The notes under the pieces are model-generated. The model searched no databases, was not told the DNA's origin, and saw nothing but the letters and a program-made list of their open reading frames with translations. A DNA stretch of 64,000 bases from contig OZ076415.1 of NCBI GenBank assembly GCA_964187785.1, positions 24,056,001 to 24,120,000 on the forward strand, given 5' to 3'. Shown here one piece after another: positions 4,918-55,374 of the stretch; the stretch's first letter is position 1; every line of letters begins with the position of its first letter. Position numbers and translations under genes: made by a program. This DNA comes from Amphiscolops sp. MND2022 (lineage: Eukaryota).

Positions 4918-7900
4918 TCACATTCTGGACAAGGAAATTTGGCTTGCCTCTTTGTCGTTGTCCTCGTTTTGTTGTGGGTGCTTGGTTTCGTTCCCTTTCG
5001 GGGTTTTTCTCCTCGGTTGATCTGCTTCTTGTTCCCCTTCGAGGTTTTTCCCCTTCTGTTCTATTTCTGTCTTTTCGCTTCGGTTTGGCTCTATTTCCTC
5101 TTCTTCTTCTTTTTCATCTTCTTCTTCTGATTCTATTGTTCCGAGTTGCTTGTTATCCCTCTCCACTTTATCCTGTTCTCGTTTTTTTGACTTGTTGTTT
5201 TTGGTTCGCTGTTCTTTCATCTTCTGTTTTAGGTTTCTTATTGCCGATTGTGGTCTTTCTGCATCTTTTGTTTTTCCCGCCAATTTAGTTGGTTCTGTTT
5301 TTGCTTCGTTCTGATTGGCTGTACGATTTGCCAGCTGGCTCGATTGTGGCAACTCGCCCTCATTGGTTGTTTCGCTCGTCTTTGTTCTCTCGCTTTCAGT
5401 CAGTGGTAATTTTCTCCTCCATTTGGAACAGCACGGTCGGTTGTTCGCTATGCCCGATGTCTCTTTTGGAGATGAGTGTTTTCGTTGTTCTTCCTGCAGG
5501 CAAGAAGGTAATCGTATGGTTGCTTTGCTTTAGCAATACTCCCTTTCTTTTCTGGTAGTTCCCCTCCAGCTTCGATCCACGAGATCTTTCTCTTACGAGA
5601 ATTGTTGAATCCTGCCTTGATTCAAAGTCGTCGTCGGTGAGAGGAAACTCAGGTTTTTCTGAAATGCACTTTGGTTTGTTAGTTATAATTCTTTTTATTG
5701 TATTCAGTTCTCGGCCCGTGTTTTGCTCGTATGGTGATTTATTCTTTGCCGATGGATTCATTCTTAATGCGAAACGAATTTCTGATTGTCGGGAAATATC
5801 TTTTCGGACTTTTATTTCCGTATTCGCACGTAATCGTTCGTTTATTGTACGAATTAGTCTTTCTATTTTTCCAATACCCTTATAGTCTCTTATGGGACAT
5901 TCTACATTCTTAATGTACCTCTTCTTGCAGAATTCCTTAAAGCGCTTGCTTCTAAAAATAATGGCTGAGTCCGTCCATATTGTTTGCGGAATTCCATGTC
6001 TTTCGATACATTCTTTTGAAAAAGCTAATACCTTATCTGTATCTGGCTTCCATAGGAACTTTGCCTCCGGCCATCCTCTAAAGTGGTCGATGGATACTAT
6101 CAGATACTTATTAGCCTTATTTGGGTTCTGAAATGGTCCTGCAAAATCTATTACAATTGTTTGGATCTTTTTGACACATTTTGGCAACTTTCCTATTTGA
6201 TTTTTTCTTAGGAGTGGTTTTATGTTCTTACCGGCTACTTGGAATTGCTGACTTGCTTTTGCTATCCCTACCTCTCTATGAAGGCGCGGCCACCACACAT
6301 TTGACAGTGTGGCAAGCATACTGTCACGTCCTGTGTGTCCAAAATGCAAGCTTCTCTTAATGATGGGGCGTAAGAAATTTGGGATGACCAATCTCTCGTC
6401 CATGTACAGGTAATTGTTTGAATCTAAACTTTAGCATCTCAACTTTCCTCTCCATGGTGCGGGTAACCGGTTGATTTTAGTTGAATCAGGCTTTTTTAGT
6501 AGTCCAATTATTTTTCGTAGGAACTCGTCTGATTCGAAATGTGCAGCGAAAGTAAAAATCACTAATGTCTGCAGATGTTCAACCTCATTGACCGAATAAA
6601 ATATCGGTGTTTTGAGCGGTGGCTTGTTCACAAATTCAATTGTGCTGGCGTTGCCAGAGTCACTATCTGAGAAACTTTCCATTTCACTGCTGCTAGCTGT
6701 TAATTCAGAAGTGGCAAATATTTTCTTTATGGTTTGATTGTTTGTTTGTTTGTTCATGCGAGTTCAGATTTGCCACTTGCGTCGCGTCAGCTAGCTCGCT
6801 TGTTTCTGTCAACTCGTTTCTGATTGGTTAGCTCGCGGTATTGCGTCCGTTCTTCTCATCTAAAACAGGCTTATTATGGTTAATTTCATTTACAGCAATC
6901 CAGTTGTTCCATAGTTCCTCGGCTTTTAGATGATTTTCTCTCTTGCTATCTAAAGAGTGCCTTGACAAATAGTCGGCCATTCCTAATGTTCGCCCGGGGC
7001 CGTTCGTTTTTGTAAATTGAAACGGTAGTAACCTGTCTACCCACCTGGTAAGCTTACTTGAAAAAGTTTGTTCGCTCTATTTCCCTTCAAAATGGACGTT
7101 AAGGCCTTATGAAACTACTTCAAACTCTGTACCGGATAAGTAGTTTCTAATATTTTCTATGGTCCACAGGACTGCCAGTAGTTCTAGTTCAATAATAAAT
7201 TTTTTTTTCATTGGTTGGTAAAAATCCCGACGCGAATGGGACTCGTCTCCCACCTTCATCTGTCTTCTGCTGGAGTACTGCTCCCAATCTTTCACGGCTT
7301 GCATCACACACAATTCTCATTGGTTGGGTTTTCTTGAAGTGTTTTTATCTCAGTTATTTGTTGTATTGACATCTTTATCCTTGGAACGCTTCTTCGTTTT
7401 CTGCCGTCCATTCCGACGTCTTTTCGTTACTTAGTAGTTGGCCTAATGGTGCACAAAGCTGCACCAGATTTGGAATAAATCTGTTTAGCTGATTTATAGC
7501 TCGCATGAATGACTGCAGTTCCTTCAGGTTCGTCGGCTTCAGTTTGTTGGTGATTGCTTGAATTTTTCTTCAATTAGTAGTGTGCTGTTTTCTGACAATT
7601 TGAAACCTAGCCATTCAGTACTTGTTTGTGCGAGTTGGCATTTCTCTATTTTCATGCGAATCCCTGCTTCGTCTAATGTTCTGAGTATGTTCTGTGATGT
7701 TCTTCATTACCTTTCGTCACTATATTAGAATGTCATCAATAAAGGCGAAGGTGTTTGAATGTTGTGCAATATTTTATCCATAATGTTTTGGAATTCTGGT
7801 GGCATTATCGCTATCCCCTATAATCCAGTTTTGAATGCGTACGTTCTGGTTGCTCTTCCTCCGATTACTTAAAAATTGCAGTGTCTAGCTGTTTTCGGGT

Positions 7901-11638: not shown

Positions 11639-14600
11639 TTAGTTTTCAGTTTCAGCTTGTTCTTCGGTCTCGTTCATGATGACATCAATGCCATATCTCT
11701 CCGTTGGTCTTCTTTTGCGAGGTTCTCTCAGCTTGACATTTGACCACTCTACCGAGGCCTGTACTACTTTCTTTCTTGGTGACCTCTCTTCATTAGTTGC
11801 TCCTTCTGCTGCAGAGCCCGTTTCCTGTATTTTGATCATTTCCGGGGGATTTGCCTTTTCCGCGGGTTGAGCTTCTTCTTGGTTTTCAACCGTTTCCATC
11901 GTGGCGGTTGTTTCCATCTCCTCTGACGTATTGTCCGTTGCCACTGTTTCTTCGTCTTCAGTATCTTCCTGTTCCCGGGGCCTATACGTTTCATCATCAG
12001 AAGATTTTTCTAGCTCTCCCGTCTCGTTATCAATTTTCGAGCACCCCGCCTTTTGTTCTTCTGCTAGTTTAGTCTCACTTGCTTTAGCCACGTCTCTTTT
12101 TGCGTACACAACTTCTTTCTTACTATTTTTTGGTAAAAATGTGATTTTGTGAGCGCTTTCTTTTATCACTTTTCCGGTCTTTCTTTTGTACTGTCCTTCT
12201 AGTTTCGAGCCTTTAGTACGTTCCCTCACTAGGATTGTTGCGTCTGCTTCTTCCTCGAAGTCTGACTGTGTAAACTCAACCTTCGGATCGTTTTCTGAAA
12301 CAATTTCGATTTTGTTTATTATGTTTTTTTTTCACGGTATTTGGTTCCCGTCCGTATAGCTTTTCGAATGGTGATTTTCCGTCCGCTTTTTTTCCCATTC
12401 TTAGCGCGTATAGAATTTCCGACAAACCTGATTTATCTCTTTTCAAGATAATATTTCTATTCGTCCTTAATCTCTCGTTGAGAGTTCGGACTAGTCGTTC
12501 TATTTTACCGTTTCCCCGGTGATCACGTACCGGGCAAGTTACGTGTTTTATTTGGAACTGTTTACAAAATGTTTTAAATTCTTCACTAGTGAAAACTGAA
12601 CCAGGGTCTGATTTGATTTGCTTTGGTATACCGTACTGTGCCACGTAGTTTTTTAAAAGTTTGATAACTTTCTCGGTTGTAGGTTTATGTAAAAATGGGG
12701 CGTCAGGCCACGCGGAATAATTCTCTATCGCGACTAACAAATATTTTTTTCCATGTTCCTCATTTTGAAAGGGGCCCGCAAAATCAAGCGCAATTTCCTC
12801 AATTGGTTCTTTTGATTTTGGTATTTCCCCAAATTGTGACTGTTTTAATAGATTTTAGCAGCGTTTTTACCTTCTTTACTGCACTGCTCGCAACATTTTG
12901 CGGTATTTATCAGCTCGCGGTGAATCTTCGGCGACCAGATATCGGCCACGTACCGTAAAATGGTATCTCTTCCTGGATGACCATAATGAATAGAACTCAC
13001 AATTGACGAGCGAAGATTTGCAGGAATTACTAGGCGTTGGTCCATGTATAAATAATTTCTATGATCTACACTAAGGGCGTTAAGTTTCTCTCTCCATGGA
13101 GCAGGTAATCGAGAAGTTTTAGAGCCTTCCCTGGTTTTAACCAGTTGAATTACTTTTTGTAAAACTTTATCTGCTTCGTAATTACCCGGTAAGTACGCTT
13201 GATTTGTTTTATCAATTATTTCAGATGCGCTGGTTTGCATGATTTTGCTTTCTCGCTGTTTACTTACGCTAGCCAATTTATTGTCCGCACTGATTATGTG
13301 TTCGTTTTCGTTCGCTTTATTTTCGCGCAATTTGATTGGTTGCTTACCTTCTCGCTGTTTTGCTTTCGTCGCCTGTCTGTCCTCTTGATCATTCTTTACT
13401 CGTAATACCGAGTCAGGCGCGCGCGTCAGCTTCCTCTCTCTTGGTACATCCTGCGGATTTGTCTCATTCTCTGGAATGACATTAATTCTCGTGATTGTAT
13501 TTACCGTGAACCAATCGTTCCATAATTTTTCGGCTTTTACTGCTGTTCCTTTCACTTTGGTAGGGTGCCGGGATAAGTAATCCGCAAAACCTAGTACTTT
13601 GCCCGGCGCAATTAATAACTCGAACTCAAATGGTAATAGCCCATCCACCCATTTAGTTAGGCAGCTTGAAAACGTTTTATTTCCTCTGTTTGGTCGTAGT
13701 ACTGAAGCGAGCGCTTTATGATCTGGAATAACTTGAAATTTTACTCCATAAACATAATTTCGGAAATGTTCTATCGCCCATACTACAGCTAGCAGCTCTA
13801 GTTCATTTATCGAATATTTAGCTTCGAAATTCGTTAAAAATCTTGACGCAGATGACACCGGTTTCCATTCTTGGTTATCTTGCTGTTTTTGGAGCATGGC
13901 TCCGAGCCCTTGTTTGCTTGCATCGCAAATAATTCTTAGTTTCTTGTTTCTTTTAAAATGGGTCAATTCCGTTATCGATTTTATTTCTTGGTTTATTTTT
14001 AAAAAGGCTTCTTCATGCTCCTTTGTCCATTTCCATTCTGCTTCTTTCTTTAGGATCGATCTAAACGGTGCACAAATACTTGCGAGGTCGGGAACGAATT
14101 TATTCAATTGGTTGACCACCCCCAGGAAGGATCTCAATTCCTTCAAGTTGTTCGGTCTTAGCATTTCGCTAATTCCTTGGATTTTGCCATTTATCGGGGC
14201 TACGCCTTCACCTGATAATTTGTATCCCAACCATTCAATTTTTGTGCACGCTATTTTACATTCATCGGCTTTCAATTTCAAGTTGGCTTTGTCTAACACT
14301 TCTAATACTTCCCGAACTGTTTGCATATGTACACTTTTTTCACCTTTTGTAAAAATTAAAATATCATCTATATATACAAATGTACCATCCATATTTATAA
14401 GTGTTAAGTCCATTACTTTCTGAAAATCGGTCGGCATTTTTGTTAGTCCGTAATGCCCCGTTACAAATCTGTATGTTACCGTTGATTTTCCGCCTATTAT
14501 TTGGAAGTTACAGTGTTTTGCCGTACTTTCATCTAGCGGAATTTGTCCGTATGCATACTTCATATCTACAGACGGATAGAAAACTTGACCCTCTTTTCCG

Positions 14601-16370
14601 TCAGTTTTTTCCGCGACCATATCCATCAGATTTTCTAGATTTGGCATCTGGTACTTATCTTTTGCAATCGAGTCATTCAGCGCTCTTGCATCTAAAGCTA
14701 TTTTTACAGATCGATCTTTCTTTACCGTTATTACTACTGGTTGTATGAAAACATCATCTTTTATCGTTTCTACTCTTTCGATATGTCCTTGATCTAATAA
14801 ATTTGTTATTTCGCTATCAACTTGGTCTTGTAATTGGATTGGAATTCTACGTCTTTTCTGCTGTGTAATTCGCGTGCCGTCTTTCATTTCAGTTTTGATT
14901 TTATAATTGTTTACTCTGCCGCGTCGTTTAAATAGATTTGGGAACTCTTGAACTAATTACTGCGCGTCCCGGCTTAGCTTATTTTCTGATTCGTCGCTTT
15001 CGCGGGAAATGCTATTTTCTGCGTTCTCACATTTTGTGATTGGTGGTTCAATTCTGTGTTTCAGCGCTGTCAGCCATTCACATCCGCTGATCGATTTAGC
15101 TCCTTTCTTTGCCACCAGCACCCTTGCTTTTGACATTCTTGTTTTTCCTACTTGGATGCTGACAAACATATATCCCAATAACGGAAGCGTGCGTCGATTG
15201 AAGTCGACATCTCTTGCCATTTATCATATCTCTGACGACTACCCACCGTCTTCCAATTATTCTTCTCAATTCGCCTATCGCAAATATCGAGACAGGCGAC
15301 CCCGTATCGATTATGGCTCTGAATTTATTGCCGCACATCAAGCCTTCTATCTCGAACGGTTTCACTCCCGTCCCGTCAACCTGCAGGACCATTTCGTCTT
15401 CATCCAGTTCTTCTTCTGAATCTTCGGATATGTAATATACCCCGGAAAATCCTTTTCTGCGGTTTCGCATCCTCTGCTTCATTTGCCTTTTTCTCTCCGG
15501 ATACTTTTGATTGCAACACTTTTCCAGATGGCCTGTTATGTTGCAGAACTCGCATTTATGGTTTGTTGCTGGACATTTCTTTATGTAGTCGGTTGTAAAA
15601 TTGCCTGCCCCACACCGAAAGCATTCTCTGTTGTTCATCTTGTCCACAGCCTGAGCGCATACCGGTTCGGTCTTTATTGTTGGTTTTGAGCCTTCTGCCA
15701 CTCCTATCCCCATAGACCTTTGTCTTTTTATGCCTTCTTCATCTGATATGGCATATCGAAGGGCTTCTTGGGGGTCGTTAAGTGGTTCCACACACAGCTT
15801 CTCCTGCACTTTCTTATTGTTCATATTTAAAATGAAGACATCGTGCACTAGTGTTTGGGTGATTTCCCCTAATTCGCATTTCGAGGCCAAGCCGTTAAGC
15901 GCATGCCAAAACTGTTGTAGCGATTTGTTTGCTTGCTGCTTTTTGGATAGAAACTTGTGTCAATCTAACGTTCTGTTTCTTGCTATGTAGAAGCAATTCT
16001 CACATCTTTGCAGCATCTCTCTGTCTGTAATGTCCACACTGACAACTCTGGATATTTATCCTTGAAGAGTTTTCGTGCCGGTTCGCCAACTGACAGGAAT
16101 AGCCAAGTTACGACTTTCTTCTCAGTCGCTTCTTCTGGCATATCCCCTATTAGCGCTTTTACCCTAGGGTGACCCTCATCCACAGTTCTTGTCAGTTCAT
16201 CTATCGATATCGAATGTTTGGCCATCACAGCCACAGCAAATAAATCTATCCATCGTTCCCATTCCATCGCAGGGGGTTTGTCTGCGTGCGGTCAGAACAG
16301 TGGTAATCCCGGAAGTAATGAAGGAATTTCGTCCTTCTGCGAGGTAGTAGAGGTATTTGGCGAATTTGAT
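11639..16370 (-). pseudogene. gag-pol of element B, broken into ORFs 15983-16267, 15096-15890, 14957-15220, 12845-14887, 12276-12740 and 11639-12229
   Basis: Canonical gypsy domain order gag-PR-RT-RH-INT with frameshifts between the fragments. Confidence 0.92.
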
Positions 16371-48358: not shown

Positions 48359-49823
48359 GGGGTCAGGGACATTTCGTCACCAGCCATTTGGGCGACAATA
48401 TGGCGTCGGTCACATGGTCGACCAAATGGGTTGATCAAATTGATCAATTAACTGATGTATTTTAAGAGGTTAGCATATTTGTTGTAAGGCTCGGTCGCTT
48501 CGCTCCCTTCGCCAAGTAGCAACATTGAGGCATGGCCATATGGCACGTCGCTCCGCTTCGCTCCTGCATTCAGGGCACTAGGGGTATGTGAACATAGCTG
48601 ACGACGTAATATTAAAAATCCGACAAACTAATCAGGGACCACACTTATAAAATAGGGACAACACTTAGTAAAGAGAAATCGCTTGGGATCACACTTAGTC
48701 AGGAGTACCGTAGAACTCTTTGCTTGTGGGTCATTCTAGGATTTTATCGATGCTTGTTTAACATTCATCTCCATAGTGCGATTTTTTTGTCCCAAATACA
48801 TGCAGTCTAGTCATCATATTCAACTAAATATCTTGACAAGATTACATGAAGAGCTTTCGCCCGGGTGGCTGTAAATAGGTCGAATTTTTCTGGTCGAAAG
48901 GACAGATGTCGAACCTTTTGATCGAATTGCAGGGATCGAAAGGAATGCGGTCGAATTTTAACGTATTTGTTGTATGGCTCGGTCGCTTCGCTCCCTTCGC
49001 CAAGTAGCAACATTGAGGCATGGCCATATGGCACGTCGCTCCGCTTTGCTTCACTCCTGCATTCAGGGCACTAGGGGTATGTGAACATATCTGACTTCGT
49101 TATAAAAATTTCGATCCGAGTTGTTTCGATCCCATTCAAAAAATTTGGTATGTCGACCTGAGGACTAACTCTGATTTTCGATCCCGTTCCTTCGACCTAC
49201 TTCCGCCCACCCCTTTCGCCCCGCCAGTGTGGACCCGGAGCGTTTGTTTTCATTATGCACGTACTCTAAAAAGTATTTGCAATGCCGACTTACAGCGGAC
49301 AACCACAGTCGTAATGTTTTTATCACTAAAAACGAACCGTTTTTACATTTGTGCTGAATTTGTGAATTTAAAATTGCGAATAAAACTTGTTTTAATGCGA
49401 AATACGTTACCAAAACGAAGAACTATTTTAAAATTAGGCCTTAGTTAGATTAGAACAAGTGAAATTACCAGTGACGAACAGATTACACCAAAAGCGAAAT
49501 TGGACAACACCTGGAGAAATTTGAAATACGAAATGACGATGGAAGGGGAACAGCAATGAGCCAATCACCAAAGGCTTCGGCTCATCTATTCTATTCTATT
49601 CTAACATCATATTAAGTTATGCGAAACTGTGCAAAAACATAAATAGACCCCCCGAAAAAATATGGGATCAATACCAAAATTGATTATTGGTATTGACCCA
49701 ATACCAATACCTGACTTAGGGGTATGTGAACATATTTGACGGGACATTTGGGCGACATTATTGTCGCCGAAATGGCAGAAATTTTTGTCGCCCAAATGGC
49801 TGGTGACGAAATGTCCCTGCCCC
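48359..49823. mobile_element. Non-autonomous TIR element (~40-bp TIRs GGGG(T)CAGGGACATTTCGTCACCAGCCATTTGGGCGACAA), 8-bp TSD
   Basis: TSD CTTGCTAA at 48351-48358 and 49824-49831, splitting a hairpin+CTAG element. An internal ~115-bp direct repeat lies at ~48485-48600 and ~48970-49090. Confidence 0.88.
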
Positions 49824-50189
49824 CTTGCTAAGCGAGGTCGAACAGGAGCAAGGACCTAGCGGGAACGGAGATCGCGAAGCGATCTTACTGGGAGCTGGTA
49901 TTTGCGACGGTGAGGGCGAGCGTGCATACACCGGATATGCCCCACATTTCAGTTTTTAGATCCTATACCTTCAGGTCTTAGGGGGCGGAGCTTCCAGGAT
50001 CTTGGGTGAAGGGTGTCCAGTTCATACAATTCAATGATCCAGTTTAGAAAAAAATTACAAATTGGACCACCTAGAATTCTACAAACGACCTATTCGTCGA
50101 GAGGACACAGAGGTAAGCAATGCTTCCCACTAGGCCTCTGTAGTCATCTAACATTTGTTGCTCATCCGATCCGTCTTCTGGCATCTGAT

Positions 50190-52057
50190 CAGGGGTTTGC
50201 AATAATTAATTGGTCTTCCAATAATTGCAATAATAATTGCCAATATTATTGATTGGGCACTTTTCCAATAACCAATTAATTGGAAATCGTTTTGCCAATT
50301 ATTGGTTTCATTGGTTTTCAAATTGAAAGCTCTTTTTCAGGTTTGAAATGAGTTCGAACAGAGATTTTAAAACCATATGCAAGAAGTATTTCACACCAAT
50401 GGAAAATGACATTTTCAAATGCAAATGTGGCAAAATTTTGAAGCAAAAAAAAGGTACCGGTTGGTCTAATTTGATGGTGCATATTCGAACACAACACGAA
50501 ACAACTCCATCCGGTCCCCAAAATACTTTGGACTTTATGCAATGTAAGAAGTCTCAAACCATCCATGATTGGATCGAATGGATATGCATGGAGCTTCGAC
50601 CTTTTAGCTTTGTGGAAAGCGAGTATGTGAAGAAAAATGTCAAGCTTGAAGCAATTTCAAAGAATACTTTGCAAAAGTATATGCATCTCCTCACCAAGAA
50701 AGTGGAACAAGAAATCATCAAAGCAATGCCAGAAAAAATTGCTTTGATAGTTGATGGATGGACATCTGGTAGCACCCACTACTTGGGCGTAATGGCATCG
50801 TTCTGCGACATGGATCAAAATGTTGAAGTTCCGTTGTTAGCTTTTTCGCCGCTCATAGATGAGACTTCACAAAGTGCTGCTCAGCAATATGTATTTTTGG
50901 AGATGACACTCAGCCAGTATGGCAAGTCGATGGAAGACAATGTGGTTGCTTTAATCGCTGATAATTGCGAGACCAATAAGGCTCTCGCTGATATCTGCAA
51001 CGTTCCACTAGTTGGATGTCACTCTCACCGTCTGGCACTAGCAGTGAAAGAATACTTGACCAACAAAGACGAACTCATTCAAAAAGTGAACACTTTAATG
51101 GGAAAGTTGAAGGCACCGAAGACTGCCGCAGAGCTGAGAAATTTCACGAATTTAAAACCAGTGCAGTATTGTGTCACGCGATGGTTGAGTGTTATGCAAA
51201 TGCTAAAGCGCTTCACTGAAATAAAGGATACGATAAGAAAAATACCTGCAGTCATTGACTTCTTGCTATCACCTAAAGAAGAACTCGAAATTGAGCAACT
51301 GGTGAAGATTCTGGAACCAATGAAATCAGTCACTATTGCTCTGCAAAGAAGTGATATGGATATGGACTCTGCTCGGACCTTGTTCGACGAGTTATTGAAA
51401 ACTGTCGAGAATTTTGATCGGAACAAGAAATATATCCATAAGAATTGTGCCATTGCCAAAAACAATTCGTTTGAAAACGCTATTGTTAAGCTACAGTCTG
51501 GTGATGAATGTGCTCTCAACGTAAATGAAAATCTAGCGTGCAAAAAATTGAGAAGAACTTCTGATATCGAGTGCGAATTTCCACAGACGGATGACTTCGC
51601 GGGAAACGTTTTGGCGAAAAAGAAGAAAGATACCAAACAGATGAAATACATTCCCTGCTCATTCATTTTGCCGACATCTAATCATTTGGAACGGTTTTTT
51701 AGCGCAGCTGGTTTCGCTTCGAATGACTACCGAAAATCAATTTTGCCGATGAATTTAGAAGAGCAACTGTTCCTTCGATTTAACAAAAAGCACTGGGATT
51801 TGAATTTAGTAAATCAAATTGTGAGTGCCTCTGAGTGAGATATTCATTTGAGTGTGCATGCCGCTGAGTGAGCTGTTTTATAATGCGTCTTTTCGATGAT
51901 TTTTGTAATTTAATCACTCTGAAACAGCTGTTTTTTAAAGTGCCCAATTATTGCACTTATTGCAATAATTTATTGGTCAAGGGTCCAATAATCAATTAAT
52001 TGGTTTTCAGAAGTTTTGGGACCAATAATTATTGCAATTATTTATTGCAAAGCCCTG
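50190..52057 (+). mobile_element. Intact, apparently autonomous hAT DNA transposon (1868 bp)
   Basis: 16-bp TIRs CAGGG(G/C)TTTGCAATAA with 1 mismatch; perfect TSD CATCTGAT (50182-50189, 52058-52065); repeated CCAATAATT subterminal motifs; single ORF. Confidence 0.96.
50348..51838 (+). CDS. hAT-family transposase, 496 aa, intronless
   Basis: BED-like finger (CKCG...NLMVHIRTQH), catalytic D in VDGWTS, D in IADNCETN, CxxH (CHSH), TRW motif, and E in SNHLERFFSAAG. Confidence 0.95.
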   Translation: MSSNRDFKTICKKYFTPMENDIFKCKCGKILKQKKGTGWSNLMVHIRTQHETTPSGPQNTLDFMQCKKSQTIHDWIEWICMELRPFSFVESEYVKKNVKLEAISKNTLQKYMHLLTKKVEQEIIKAMPEKIALIVDGWTSGSTHYLGVMASFCDMDQNVEVPLLAFSPLIDETSQSAAQQYVFLEMTLSQYGKSMEDNVVALIADNCETNKALADICNVPLVGCHSHRLALAVKEYLTNKDELIQKVNTLMGKLKAPKTAAELRNFTNLKPVQYCVTRWLSVMQMLKRFTEIKDTIRKIPAVIDFLLSPKEELEIEQLVKILEPMKSVTIALQRSDMDMDSARTLFDELLKTVENFDRNKKYIHKNCAIAKNNSFENAIVKLQSGDECALNVNENLACKKLRRTSDIECEFPQTDDFAGNVLAKKKKDTKQMKYIPCSFILPTSNHLERFFSAAGFASNDYRKSILPMNLEEQLFLRFNKKHWDLNLVNQIVSASE

Positions 52058-52149
52058 CATCTGATCCTTCGTCAGCTCCAGCTTGTTCGACTGCTCTGCT
52101 TTTGAAGCGGTTGATTTTCACCCAAATTTTTGATGGAAAATAGTAGGAT

Positions 52150-52820: not shown

Positions 52821-54008
52821 ATGCCGGAAGCATCCTTTTCACTCAATAACTTGCTGGATCTTCAAAATAAAATCAAGAGAGACCCTACTGGATATCACGA
52901 TGACTTTGTTCAAGCTCATTTATATTTCAAAACCTGCATTGACTTATTTGAGCTTGAGCCAGCTCAGCCACACAAGCATTTACAACAGCTCATATTGTTC
53001 ATGGCATATATAACACCTTGTTACCGGCAGGAGCTGAGTCAACTTTCGTCTTTATTCCGTGGAATTCTCCTACGTCATAAAAACAATTTACATCCACATC
53101 TTCGATTATCGTTTTGTAAAGCTCTGACTTTCTACAGGAATCGTGATATAGTCACTCCAGTTTTTATTCTCGAAACCTTTTTCGAGCTGTGCTCCTGTCA
53201 GGATAAACAACTGCGTAGTTTCATCAAGAACTTTATGAAGAACGACTTGCGGAAGATAAATGAGAAAAATTACGACAAAAAGTTAAACTCGCAATTACAA
53301 ATTCTTGTTTTTACAAAGCTCAAAGTTTCCAATGTCAGCATAGCAAAAGTAGCATTGATGCTTCTGTGTGATATGTTTAGAAAACGAATATGGACTGATT
53401 CGAAAGTAGTTAATGCTATTTCGAATTGTCTTTTCTCAACTCAACCTGTAATTCTTGTGAAAGCCCTGGCATTTTTCGTAAAGCGAGATGAATCAGGTGA
53501 AATAGAAATTGCCGACAGCGACAGTGAAAAATCCGATGAGGGAGAAAGGAAAAATAAGTACGAGCAACAACTGAAGAGTTTACTGCAAGCTAAGGTCGTC
53601 ACAAAGAAAACAAAACGGAAAGCAAGGAAACTCGATAGAGCTAAAAAGCTGCTCAAGAAAGAACAAAAAGAAGAGAAAATTGTCGATAACCTGTCTGCTC
53701 TTGATCTGATTTATGATGCACAGTCCTTGGGGGAACGCCTTCTGAAATATTTATCTAAGTACAACGGCAAATTACATGTAAAACTCATGATGATGGATTT
53801 AATATCTCGTTTGATTGGCGTTCATAAATTGACCATCCTGAATTTTTTCCCATTTATTCAGAGATACTTGCACGTCAATCAACGCGAGGTTACTAAAGTG
53901 CTCCTGTTTGCAGCTCAAGCTGTCCATGATGAGATTCCAGACGATGTTATTGAGAAGCTTGTTTTATTCATTTGTTACAATTTCATCTCCGATCAGAATG
54001 CTGACGAG
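52821..54008 (+). CDS. SDAD1: SDA1 homolog (60S ribosome biogenesis/export factor), exon 1 (396 codons)
   Basis: NLLDLQNKIKRDPTGYHDDF, LHPHLRLSFCKAL...RNRD, FFELCSCQDKQLR, KRIWTDSKVVNAI, NFFPFIQRYL...QREVTKVL..AAQAVH are typical SDA1 motifs. Donor GAG|GTTTGT. Confidence 0.93.
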
Positions 54009-54237
54009 GTTTGTAAATTATGCTCTCGTCGAAAACTGTTAAACGGTCTGCAATTGTTTAACAGTATGTCGTCAAACGAGTTGCGGTGGCTTAAATATGT
54101 TGGGCAAGCAAGAATCAAATGAAGTACTTTAATTTTTGATTTCAAGGACATTTGTTGTTTCTTATTGAAGTGCGTTTTTGGACTTGGATTCAAATGATAG
54201 CTCTTTCTTTTCATCTTCGAAACTTTGAGTGTTTTAG

Positions 54238-55374
54238 GTGATGGCAGTTGGTTTGAACACAGTCCGTGAAATTATCCACAGACATCCGAAAGCTCTGGCG
54301 TGTAATCCTGATCTTGTTGACGACCTTGTGGAATACAAGAAACATAGAAACCGCGGTGTAGTAACAGCCGCTCGATCCGTCATTCAAACCTTGAAGGAAG
54401 TCAACCCTCAGTTGCTGAAGAGCAAACATCGAGGCAAACCCACTGCACATTTGACGGAAGTCTTACAAGGTACTCAAAGCATAATTCCAGGAGCTGAAGT
54501 TTTGAATACAGAGGAGAACCAGCAATCAGGAGAATCTGCATCTGAGAGTGAAGACGAAGCTGGACCTTCACAAGCGAAACGTCGTAAAACTGATAACAAC
54601 GACTTGCAAGAAATTGAAGAGTTAGATGCGGGAAGCGAAGATAGTGATGAATATGAAGATGTCGACGATGATGAAGAAGAGGTAGATTCCGATGACGAGG
54701 AAGAAAGTAATTCAGAAGATGAAGATCTCTCAATAGGATCTGAATCCAAAACAGAAAATAATGAGGAAGAAAAGCTTACAAATCAAACTCAATCTTCAAC
54801 TGCGGGTACAATAGAAAGCTCTAAAACAAGTAAAGTTGTAACCACTAATGAGTTTCTAGCCTCTCGAATTCTTACTGATGAAGACTTCAAGAAAATCAAA
54901 ATCGAGAACTTGCGCAAAAAGATTGAATCTACAAGTCGGGATCGCAAACGCAAGCTTGCTGCTACGAAATTGAATGACTGGTCGAAGCGAAAGAAGAAAA
55001 AGGTCAAAGAAATAGATCCTAATGACCTTGAGGAGATGCCACAAGAAATCGATTCTGAAGACCTCGAGAATGAATCGAGTGATGGCGAAATCAATAATTT
55101 GCCGAGGTTTGAATCAATTGCGAAAGTAAACATTAGAAAGAGACACGACAAAGAATCCAAAATGGCGACCATGTTAGCCGGCCGAGAAGACAGAGAAAAG
55201 TTTGGGAGACCCAACAAGAGACAGAACCCAATGGCCAGCACTACAAATGCAGAGAAGAGCAAAAAGAAGAACTTCATCATGATGCGACAGAAACGCAAGA
55301 CGCAAAAGACCAAGTCTTTCAAAGAAAGACAGCTGCAATTGAAAAACTCTTTAAAGCGAAGATATCCCAAATAG
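54238..55374 (+). CDS. SDAD1: SDA1 homolog exon 2 (378 aa + stop); total 774 aa, one 229-bp intron (54009-54237)
   Basis: Acceptor GTTTTAG|GTG joins NADE|VMAVGLNTVREI (cf. human NSGEVMTVGINAIKEI). KHRGKPT, an acidic tract, SRILTDEDFKKI, AGREDREKFG and STTNAEKSKKKNFIMMR follow. Confidence 0.93.
   Translation: MMAVGLNTVREIIHRHPKALACNPDLVDDLVEYKKHRNRGVVTAARSVIQTLKEVNPQLLKSKHRGKPTAHLTEVLQGTQSIIPGAEVLNTEENQQSGESASESEDEAGPSQAKRRKTDNNDLQEIEELDAGSEDSDEYEDVDDDEEEVDSDDEEESNSEDEDLSIGSESKTENNEEEKLTNQTQSSTAGTIESSKTSKVVTTNEFLASRILTDEDFKKIKIENLRKKIESTSRDRKRKLAATKLNDWSKRKKKKVKEIDPNDLEEMPQEIDSEDLENESSDGEINNLPRFESIAKVNIRKRHDKESKMATMLAGREDREKFGRPNKRQNPMASTTNAEKSKKKNFIMMRQKRKTQKTKSFKERQLQLKNSLKRRYPK

What the first reader, a model, noticed from the sequence alone, without database searches (positions are those of the whole stretch)
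50190..52057. Intact, unusually compact hAT transposon that may be a horizontal acquisition
Seen: perfect 8-bp TSD, 15/16 TIR match and an uninterrupted intronless 496-aa ORF, in a neighbourhood where nearly every other coding TE is frameshifted, so the insertion is recent. Knowledge: hAT transposases are usually about 600-800 aa. Inference from memory, not from a search: the motif set (ELRPFSFVE, ISKNTLQKYM, LLAFSPLIDET, LIADNCETNKALAD, LVGCHSHRLALAVK, ILPTSNHLERFFS) recalls short hATs abundant in oomycetes, other stramenopiles and early-diverging fungi rather than animal Ac/Buster/Tip elements. That would suggest horizontal transfer into an animal genome.
Basis: partly seen in the sequence, partly recalled or inferred. 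Interest (0 to 1): 0.75.

Follow-up and report, generated by a model that had tools for sequence, protein, structure and literature searches.

The report
Young active compact hAT transposon
This is a complete, very recently active cut-and-paste (hAT) jumping gene with an unusually small enzyme, but it belongs to a large group of such elements already living in this marine animal's genome, and nothing shows that it recently arrived from an oomycete or other distant organism.

Summary
Window 50190-52057 is an 1868-bp element with a perfect 8-bp target duplication (CATCTGAT), 23-nt inverted ends and one uninterrupted 496-codon ORF.

The protein is a genuine hAT transposase. It has a BED finger, D136/D205/E448, a CxxH motif and W279. 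A family profile matches Hermes at E 1e-11, and the predicted fold also matches Hermes.

The family is young and small. There are 7 full copies, 0.42% apart, each with its own target duplication, and about 95 termini genome-wide. Most other copies are internal-deletion derivatives.

The horizontal-transfer reading is not supported:
- The nearest relatives (57% and 54% amino-acid identity) are other intact 1.8-2.0 kb hAT lineages in the same genome, which holds at least 13 such lineages.
- Decayed copies of this same family, 85-89% identical, are also present.
- Base composition matches the host gene next door.
- A named Phytophthora protein belongs to the same compact clade but is only 31% identical and lies in another subclade. 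An AU test rejects grouping it with this element (p 3e-7).

The compactness is a property of the whole clade, which has at least 150 clusters at 50% identity in public data.

The scan had not reported this family before.

The parts
50182..50189 (.). Left copy of the 8-bp target-site duplication (CATCTGAT)
   Evidence: Paralogous uninterrupted repeat copies carry it only once.
50190..50212 (+). 5' terminal inverted repeat, beginning CAGGGG
   Evidence: pair I1 (23 nt, 91%). The same terminus occurs on 95 sites genome-wide.
50190..50347 (+). 5' subterminal region and leader, carrying repeated CAATWATT motifs; these are inferred transposase-binding sites
   Evidence: 12 motif copies in the 290 bp of the two end regions, 0 in the interior, 23 in the whole 64-kb window.
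50348..51838 (+). Intronless transposase gene, 496 aa
50381..50497 (+). BED zinc finger (aa 12-50), DNA-binding domain
   Evidence: Pfam PF02892, E 1e-4, above the gathering score. 14 of 24 clade members match it.
50753..51691 (+). Catalytic core: D136 (50753-50755), D205 (50960-50962), C224/H227 CxxH motif, W279 (51182-51184), E448 (51689-51691). The all-helical insertion domain lies between W279 and E448.
   Evidence: These columns are invariant or nearly invariant in A1. They align to the Hermes DDE, CxxH and W positions. The fold matches Hermes.
51741..51741 (+). The only private substitution of this copy: T here, C in the other six full copies and in run contigs (Thr465 to Ile, a variable column)
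51839..52057 (+). 3' subterminal region with CAATWATT motifs
52035..52057 (-). 3' terminal inverted repeat, ending CCCTG
   Evidence: pair I1.
52058..52065 (.). Right copy of the 8-bp target-site duplication
50096..50189 (.). Left part of the ~122-nt host interspersed repeat that the element split; its right part is 52066-52086
52821..55374 (+). Neighbouring host gene SDA1 (two long ORF blocks). The transposon lies 764 bp upstream of its first ATG.

Best explanation
This is an autonomous, probably still active DNA transposon of the hAT superfamily. It belongs to a compact clade with ~1.8-2.0 kb elements, ~490-530 aa transposases and CAGGG termini.

Inferred mechanism, by analogy with Hermes and Ac:
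- The BED finger and the N-terminal region bind the CAATWATT arrays in both subterminal regions.
- The D136/D205/E448 centre cuts at the CAG...CTG ends, with hairpin formation on the flanking DNA.
- The element reinserts with an 8-bp staggered cut at sites biased to nTnnnnAn.
- Interrupted gap repair yields the many internally deleted non-autonomous copies.

The copy in the window is one product of a very recent burst. The lineage has lived in this bilaterian marine animal's genome for much longer and has diversified there alongside at least a dozen sister lineages. It was not freshly acquired from an oomycete-like donor.
For: Shown:
- Anatomy of the element.
- hAT membership: profile match to Hermes at E 1.3e-11, covering the D, CxxH, TRW and SxERxFS motifs. 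hhalign against canonical hATs gives 99.96% probability, E 6.5e-39, over residues 7-490. The AlphaFold model (pLDDT 87.6) matches Hermes at E 8e-14.
- Recent activity: 7 full copies with different TSDs, mean pairwise difference 0.42%, in a star-like pattern, 5 of 7 with an intact ORF. At least 13 deletion derivatives have distinct breakpoints and perfect TSDs. There are 95 termini genome-wide.
- Target bias: T at position 2 and A at position 7.
- Subterminal motif arrays.
- Long residence: decayed copies at 89% and 85% nt identity, the 89% one still with its TSD. At least 13 sister lineages of 38-58% aa identity exist, 12 of them with 8-bp TSDs, CAGGG ends and 487-530 aa ORFs.
- Trees: the element groups with two own-genome lineages (support 99-100), inside a clade made mostly of own-genome lineages.
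- Composition: GC3 is 0.44 against 0.40 for the adjacent SDA1 gene.
- Possible transcription: seawater metatranscriptome contigs hold up to 96% of the element's sampled words.

Inferred: the binding sites, the hairpin chemistry and present-day activity.
Against: - There is no direct evidence of transposition or of transcription in the host. Two raw RNA runs gave no reads anywhere on the stretch, not even on the SDA1 exon, so they are no test.
- What first looked like an empty-site allele turned out to be paralogous repeat copies. Insertion polymorphism is therefore not shown.
- The window protein itself does not reach Pfam's hAT dimerisation model. The clade lacks the first half of that domain, so oligomerisation may differ from Hermes.
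- Most relatives come from unnamed metagenome contigs. Host ranges, and hence older transfers, cannot be judged.
Confidence: 0.85

Rival explanations
1. One reading: the element, or its immediate family, entered this animal genome recently by horizontal transfer from an oomycete, another stramenopile or an early fungus.
For: - The nearest named Atlas clusters, by features and by shape, are oomycete-dominated compact BED proteins.
- A Phytophthora megakarya protein of 500 aa aligns over its full length.
- The family is young and low in copy number.
- Its closest outside relatives are scattered in marine metagenomes.
Against: - Identity to the Phytophthora protein is only 31%. That protein sits in a different 27-row subclade, and forcing the two together costs 144 log-likelihood units (AU p 3.5e-7).
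- The nearest relatives are in the same genome, at 57% and 54%.
- Copies of the same family at 85-89% nt identity show residence 25-50 times older than the burst.
- The outside relatives whose contigs were read are AT-rich (GC3 0.24-0.37), unlike what I recall of Phytophthora genomes.
- The element's composition equals the host's.
- The best non-own cluster representative among 1.84 billion proteins is 42% identical. The best outside protein found at all, P0002, is about 45%.
Confidence: 0.04
2. The compact clade as a whole owes its patchy spread to older, repeated horizontal transfers among aquatic eukaryotes. It is seen in a marine bilaterian, in oomycetes, in an alveolate-labelled transcriptome and in many unnamed plankton contigs. 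On this view the host's dozen lineages include several independent arrivals.
For: - Own-genome lineages are interleaved with environmental sequences. At least 3 separate own-genome groups are forced by well-supported branches. For example, own lineage L044 pairs with P0005 at 56% but is only 41% identical to the window element.
- Named members come from very distant groups.
- hAT elements are known from the literature to transfer horizontally.
Against: - Interleaving is equally expected if the lineages are old paralogues inherited vertically and the unnamed contigs come from related animals.
- No pair of sequences from different organisms is closer than about 56%.
- Taxon labels are missing for nearly all relatives.
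- The Siedleckia transcript may be contamination from its animal host.
Confidence: 0.3
3. The locus is a dead relic or an assembly duplicate rather than a live element.
For: No RNA reads were laid. Two of the seven full copies share a frameshifting 1-bp insertion.
Against: - Each copy has different flanks and a different TSD.
- Five ORFs are intact.
- All catalytic residues are present.
- Independent assemblies and runs hold the element.
Confidence: 0.05

Closest known systems
Hermes transposase of Musca domestica (hAT superfamily; PDB 2bw3, 4d1q, 6dww, 8edg)
   Same: - BED finger.
- RNase-H-like DDE core split by an all-helical insertion domain.
- CxxH and TRW motifs, and the C-terminal SxERxFS with the catalytic E.
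- 8-bp TSD and ends beginning CAG.

   Different: - 496 aa against 612 aa.
- The distance from the conserved W to the catalytic E is 169 residues, against 253 in Hermes (W319 to E572, Hermes numbering from my own knowledge). The N-terminal part is also shorter.
- Only 16-18% identity in the structural alignments.
- The element is 1.87 kb, against about 2.7 kb for Hermes.
Ac/Ds of maize and the Ac group of hAT elements
   Same: - Termini beginning CAGGG. Several sister lineages begin CAGGGAT, as Ac does (from my own knowledge).
- Target bias nTnnnnAn. The consensus for the Ac group is recalled from Arensburger et al. 2011.
- Subterminal short-motif arrays.
- A swarm of internally deleted non-autonomous derivatives.
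   Different: - Ac is 4.6 kb, has introns and encodes 807 aa. This element is intronless and far smaller.
- No tree with named Ac, Buster or Tip references was made here.
Compact BED-type hAT-like proteins of oomycetes (e.g. Phytophthora megakarya OWY97050.1; Atlas clusters of 412-513 aa)
   Same: - Same length class.
- Same weak Pfam signature (BED only, or weak ZBED1 helical).
- Same fold: TM 0.86 over 464 residues.
- Same large clade in the exhaustive profile search.
   Different: - 31% identity.
- A different subclade; grouping is rejected.
- GC-rich amino-acid make-up, against an AT-rich one here.
Canonical ~600-800 aa animal and plant hATs, ZBED1-like (with PF05699 and PF27041)
   Same: Homologous over the whole length (hhalign 99.96%).
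   Different: - The compact clade lacks about 110 residues. These are chiefly the stretch before the catalytic E that carries the conserved W and the YP.L motif of the Pfam dimerisation domain.
- That is why Pfam PF05699 does not reach the window protein.

Membership tests
hAT superfamily of DNA transposons | 8-bp target-site duplication | tested here: met
   This copy and 20 independent insertions of the family. 12 of the sampled sister lineages also have one.
hAT superfamily of DNA transposons | Short terminal inverted repeats beginning (C/T)A(G/A) | tested here: met
   23-nt TIR beginning CAGGGG. All sister lineages with a recognised TIR begin CAGGG.
hAT superfamily of DNA transposons | DDE RNase-H-like core interrupted by an all-alpha insertion domain, with the CxxH motif and the conserved W | tested here: met
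   D136, D205, C224, H227, W279 and E448 are conserved in A1 and align to Hermes. The fold match to Hermes is E 8e-14, TM 0.57-0.59.
hAT superfamily of DNA transposons | C-terminal hAT dimerisation domain (Pfam PF05699) | tested here: inconclusive
   There is no Pfam hit for this protein, and 2 of 24 clade members hit weakly. The second half, with SxERxFS, aligns to Hermes and to canonical hATs. The first half is absent.
hAT superfamily of DNA transposons | N-terminal BED zinc finger | tested here: met
   PF02892 at 22.7 bits, above the 20.6 cut-off.
hAT superfamily of DNA transposons | Demonstrated excision and integration, with a hairpin on the flanking DNA | not testable with these tools
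   Supported only indirectly, by the near-identical dispersed copies and the deletion derivatives.
Ac group within hAT (as against Buster or Tip) | Target consensus nTnnnnAn | tested here: met
   T at position 2 in 24/37 and A at position 7 in 26/37, counted on both strands. The published consensus is recalled, not looked up.
Ac group within hAT (as against Buster or Tip) | Phylogenetic placement with named Ac-group transposases | not tested
   No named Ac, Buster or Tip sequences were available by reference.
Horizontally transferred transposon | Similarity to an element in a distant taxon far above that of host genes | tested here: not met
   The best non-own cluster representative is 42% aa identical and the best outside protein found, P0002, about 45%. 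Phytophthora is at 31%. The host SDA1 gene is 39-42% identical to named animals.
Horizontally transferred transposon | Tree placement next to the donor lineage and away from resident elements | tested here: not met
   The element is nested among own-genome lineages. An AU test rejects the Phytophthora grouping.
Horizontally transferred transposon | Absence from sister species of the host | not testable with these tools
   One 13-kb locus of a relative (SDA1 89% aa identical) was reached. Its upstream DNA does not align. That relative's genome could not be searched.

The most novel reading that the evidence does not exclude
The ~500-aa, CAGGG-ended elements form a distinct and so far uncharacterised minimal branch of hAT. 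It has a truncated dimerisation domain and has spread among aquatic eukaryotes (a marine bilaterian, oomycetes, alveolate-associated samples and many plankton contigs), partly by old horizontal transfers. This family would be a live, naturally minimal hAT transposase, usable as a small gene-transfer tool. It might also be an autonomous partner of the hAT MITEs that earlier notes of this scan saw forming introns in the same genome.
Probability: 0.3. Interest if true: 0.5.

Novelty: new member of a known kind. Interest (0 to 1): 0.3.

Why it matters
The finding gives a clean example of a transposon family caught in the middle of a burst. It has a few intact masters and a swarm of fresh deletion derivatives, and the boundaries of this copy can be checked exactly against uninterrupted paralogues of the repeat it split.

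It also shows that a compact hAT branch, which Pfam's dimerisation model largely misses, is abundant in public data and richly diversified in one animal genome.

It does not provide a case of cross-kingdom transfer. For practical use, a 496-aa hAT transposase with 1.9-kb ends-in architecture could be of interest as a small transposition tool if shown to be active.

Tried and rejected
1. Empty-site allele. Contigs of run X6 seemed to read the site without the element. Genome searches showed that both flanks are repeats, and that paralogous copies of a ~122-nt repeat read across the site and end 21 nt beyond it, exactly where those contigs diverge. I withdrew the polymorphism claim.

2. Expression. 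Two raw RNA runs of the labelled species gave no reads at all, even on the SDA1 exon, so they are no test.

3. Taxon labels. The word-index searches returned only unnamed metagenome and ENA proteins. Of 30 clusters looked up, only two carried names: Phytophthora megakarya and a Siedleckia nematoides transcriptome. A paper search for assembly GCA_041443065 found nothing. Literature searches on oomycete hATs and on marine introners gave nothing specific.

4. Orthologous site in a related species. Only the SDA1 coding DNA aligns (78.6% nt); the upstream DNA does not.

5. NCBIfam gave only noise.

6. The careful IQ-TREE run did not finish in time. The quick IQ-TREE trees and the FastTree tree were used instead, and they agree.

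7. Findings search by sequence: blank.

Full report
**1. Observation**

The element spans window 50190-52057 (1868 bp).
- CATCTGAT stands immediately before it (50182-50189) and after it (52058-52065).
- The ends are inverted repeats of 23 nt at 91% complementarity; the first 16 nt match 15/16 (pair I1).
- One ORF, 50348-51838 on the + strand, encodes 496 aa without interruption.
- The boundaries are confirmed independently. The element sits inside a ~122-nt interspersed repeat with at least 339 first-look candidates in the genome. Uninterrupted paralogues of that repeat read through the site with a single CATCTGAT.

**2. What the protein is**

- Pfam sees only a BED finger, at residues 12-50.
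- An alignment of 24 relatives (A1) has invariant or nearly invariant D136 (DGW), D205 (DN), C224-x-x-H227-R228, T277-R278-W279 and E448-R449-x-F451-S452.
- A profile of A1 finds the Hermes transposase at E 1.3e-11. The DxW, CxSH, TRW and SxERxFS motifs align to the Hermes catalytic positions.
- Profile-profile comparison with six canonical hAT proteins of ~530-810 aa gives 99.96% probability, E 6.5e-39, over residues 7-490.
- An AlphaFold model built on A1 (mean pLDDT 87.6, pTM 0.77) matches Hermes structures first: Foldseek E 8e-14, TM 0.57-0.59. P-element and ISCth4 transposases follow far behind.

The protein is therefore a hAT-superfamily transposase.

Its small size has two causes:
- a shorter helical insertion domain, 169 residues from the conserved W to the catalytic E, against 253 in Hermes by my recollection of Hermes numbering;
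- loss of the first half of the Pfam dimerisation domain.

The second point explains why PF05699 misses the window protein and matches only 2 of 24 clade members weakly.

**3. Family in this genome**

The window is contig C7:24056001-24120000 of a 1.07-Gb assembly.
- A DNA search finds 7 full-length copies, plus many copies in which both ends are joined across different internal deletions.
- The 7 full copies have 7 different TSDs. They differ pairwise by 4-12 positions (mean 0.42%), almost all singletons. The window copy has a single private change, at 51741: Thr465 to Ile, in a variable column.
- Five of the seven keep the 496-aa ORF. Two share a 1-bp insertion.
- Twenty independent insertions, 7 full and 13 deleted, all have perfect 8-bp TSDs. 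T is favoured at position 2 and A at position 7.
- The 23-nt terminus occurs 95 times in the genome against 0 for the control. That means roughly 45-50 elements, the smallest 331 bp.
- The motif CAATWATT occurs 12 times in the 290 bp of subterminal DNA and never in the interior. These 12 are half of all its occurrences in the 64-kb window.

This is the pattern of an autonomous element with fresh non-autonomous derivatives, as in Ac/Ds.

**4. Is it a newcomer?**

Three lines of evidence say no.

*Older copies of the same family exist.* One is 89% identical over the full length and still has a TSD but a broken ORF. Another is 85% identical, and there are fragments at 83-90%. The lineage has been here for 25-50 times longer than the age of the burst.

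*The genome holds a large radiation of the same compact kind.* A protein search gives 4240 first-look candidates. Intact ORFs of 487-536 aa appear at 58, 54, 49, 47, 46, 43, 41, 39 and 38% identity, several in multiple identical copies. Of the lineages I cut out, 12 proved to be 1.8-2.5 kb elements (most 1.8-2.0 kb) with CAGGG(G/A) ends and perfect 8-bp TSDs.

*The trees place the element among own-genome lineages.*
- In the IQ-TREE tree (35 rows, SH-aLRT) and the FastTree tree (150 rows), the window protein groups with two own-genome lineages (support 99-100). That group sits inside a 6-row clade of five own-genome lineages plus one metagenome sequence (97-98).
- Long-contig ENA proteins that looked like outside relatives are the same species. 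Assembly ERZ25074608 carries this element at 99.8% identity and the sister lineages at 86-100%.

*Composition agrees.* The element is 38% GC and the window 39%. ORF GC3 is 0.44, against 0.40 for the adjacent host gene.

**5. The oomycete lead**

- The ESM Atlas, by language-model features and by shape, puts oomycete-dominated compact BED-type clusters first: 513 aa at TM 0.86/0.84, then 412 aa at TM 0.76/0.91.
- The exhaustive profile search finds 2389 cluster representatives at E 1e-30 or better. The top 150 are all at E 1e-114 or better, and most are full-length proteins of ~500 aa.
- One of them is Phytophthora megakarya OWY97050.1. Another is a transcript filed under the alveolate Siedleckia nematoides.

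But likeness is not kinship at the level needed for transfer.
- The Phytophthora protein is 31% identical to the window protein.
- It lies with other GC-rich-looking sequences in a 27-row subclade. That subclade is separate from the 92-row clade (support 98) holding every own-genome lineage.
- Forcing it together with the window trio lowers the log-likelihood by 144 (AU p 3.5e-7).
- The nearest non-own cluster representative in 1.84 billion is 42% identical. The best outside protein found at all, P0002 from the word search, is about 45%.
- The outside relatives whose contigs I could read are AT-rich (GC 0.29-0.39, GC3 0.24-0.37). Several end in CAGGG/CCCTG at about 1.87 kb. Some come from marine cruise samples.

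There is thus no candidate donor and no excess similarity.

**6. Host**

- The neighbouring gene is SDA1.
- Its best named relatives are echinoderms, molluscs and vertebrates at 39-42% identity. Unnamed marine relatives reach 67-89%.
- The host is therefore a bilaterian animal from a group with no close named genome in the collection.
- Runs that hold the element are two coded organism labels plus marine metagenomes and a seawater metatranscriptome.
- Contigs of 'organism B' match 779 nt of the right flank and the start of SDA1 without a difference. That label covers the same or a nearly identical genome, not a second host.

**7. What could not be shown**

- Transcription in the host: the two raw RNA runs laid nothing, not even on SDA1, so they are no test.
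- Insertion polymorphism: withdrawn.
- Presence in sister species: the one orthologous locus reached aligns only in coding DNA.
- Older transfers of the clade among aquatic eukaryotes remain possible. Own-genome lineages interleave with environmental sequences. Without organism names this cannot be told apart from old paralogy.

**8. Verdict**

- The element is a young, probably active, autonomous member of a compact hAT clade that is resident and diversified in this genome.
- The claim of recent horizontal acquisition is not supported.
- It is a new member of a known kind, of modest interest.

Noticed in passing
window 50096-50189 and 52066-52086: A ~122-nt interspersed repeat, split by the hAT insertion. 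It has at least 339 first-look copies genome-wide at 86-90% identity. A second, unrelated repeat family begins at about 52127.
   Followed up: partly
window 49706-49963: Summed contig depth in run X6 jumps to 1e5-6e5, against about 54 for single-copy DNA, with many small rearranged joints. This is a very high-copy or satellite-like stretch just upstream of the element.
   Followed up: no
G000:C1675:23516-30437 (loci L002, L009, L010): On an unplaced contig, one full copy and two copies truncated at the same point (element positions 618-1868) follow each other at a ~2.5-kb period. This looks like a tandem duplication that includes part of the element.
   Followed up: no
G000:C9:12714974-12731869: Four 3' termini of the family lie in the same orientation, 4.8-6.1 kb apart (mostly about 6 kb). 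This is probably a tandemly duplicated segment containing an element end.
   Followed up: no
G000:C10:45083938-45084268: The smallest derivative with both ends is 331 bp. It is a MITE-sized product of this young family.
   Followed up: no
window 52821-55374: The host SDA1 gene is read in only two long ORF blocks (433 and 378 codons), so it has very few introns. A related species (assembly ERZ26859043) has it at 89% aa and 78.6% nt identity, with unalignable upstream DNA.
   Followed up: partly
window 12845-14887 (- strand) and 5396-6403 (- strand): A 680-aa Ty3/gypsy-type pol ORF (RT, RNase H, integrase zinc domain) and a separate integrase-core fragment.
   Followed up: no
runs X5-X8: Runs filed under a second organism label hold the element, and they hold this locus's single-copy flank without a difference. 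The label may be a synonym, a very close relative or a mixed sample.
   Followed up: partly
L064:2119-4068 (JGI metagenome contig): A distant relative of the transposase lies next to a DUF4371/ZBED5-like hAT-type gene on the same 5.8-kb contig of an unknown eukaryote.
   Followed up: no
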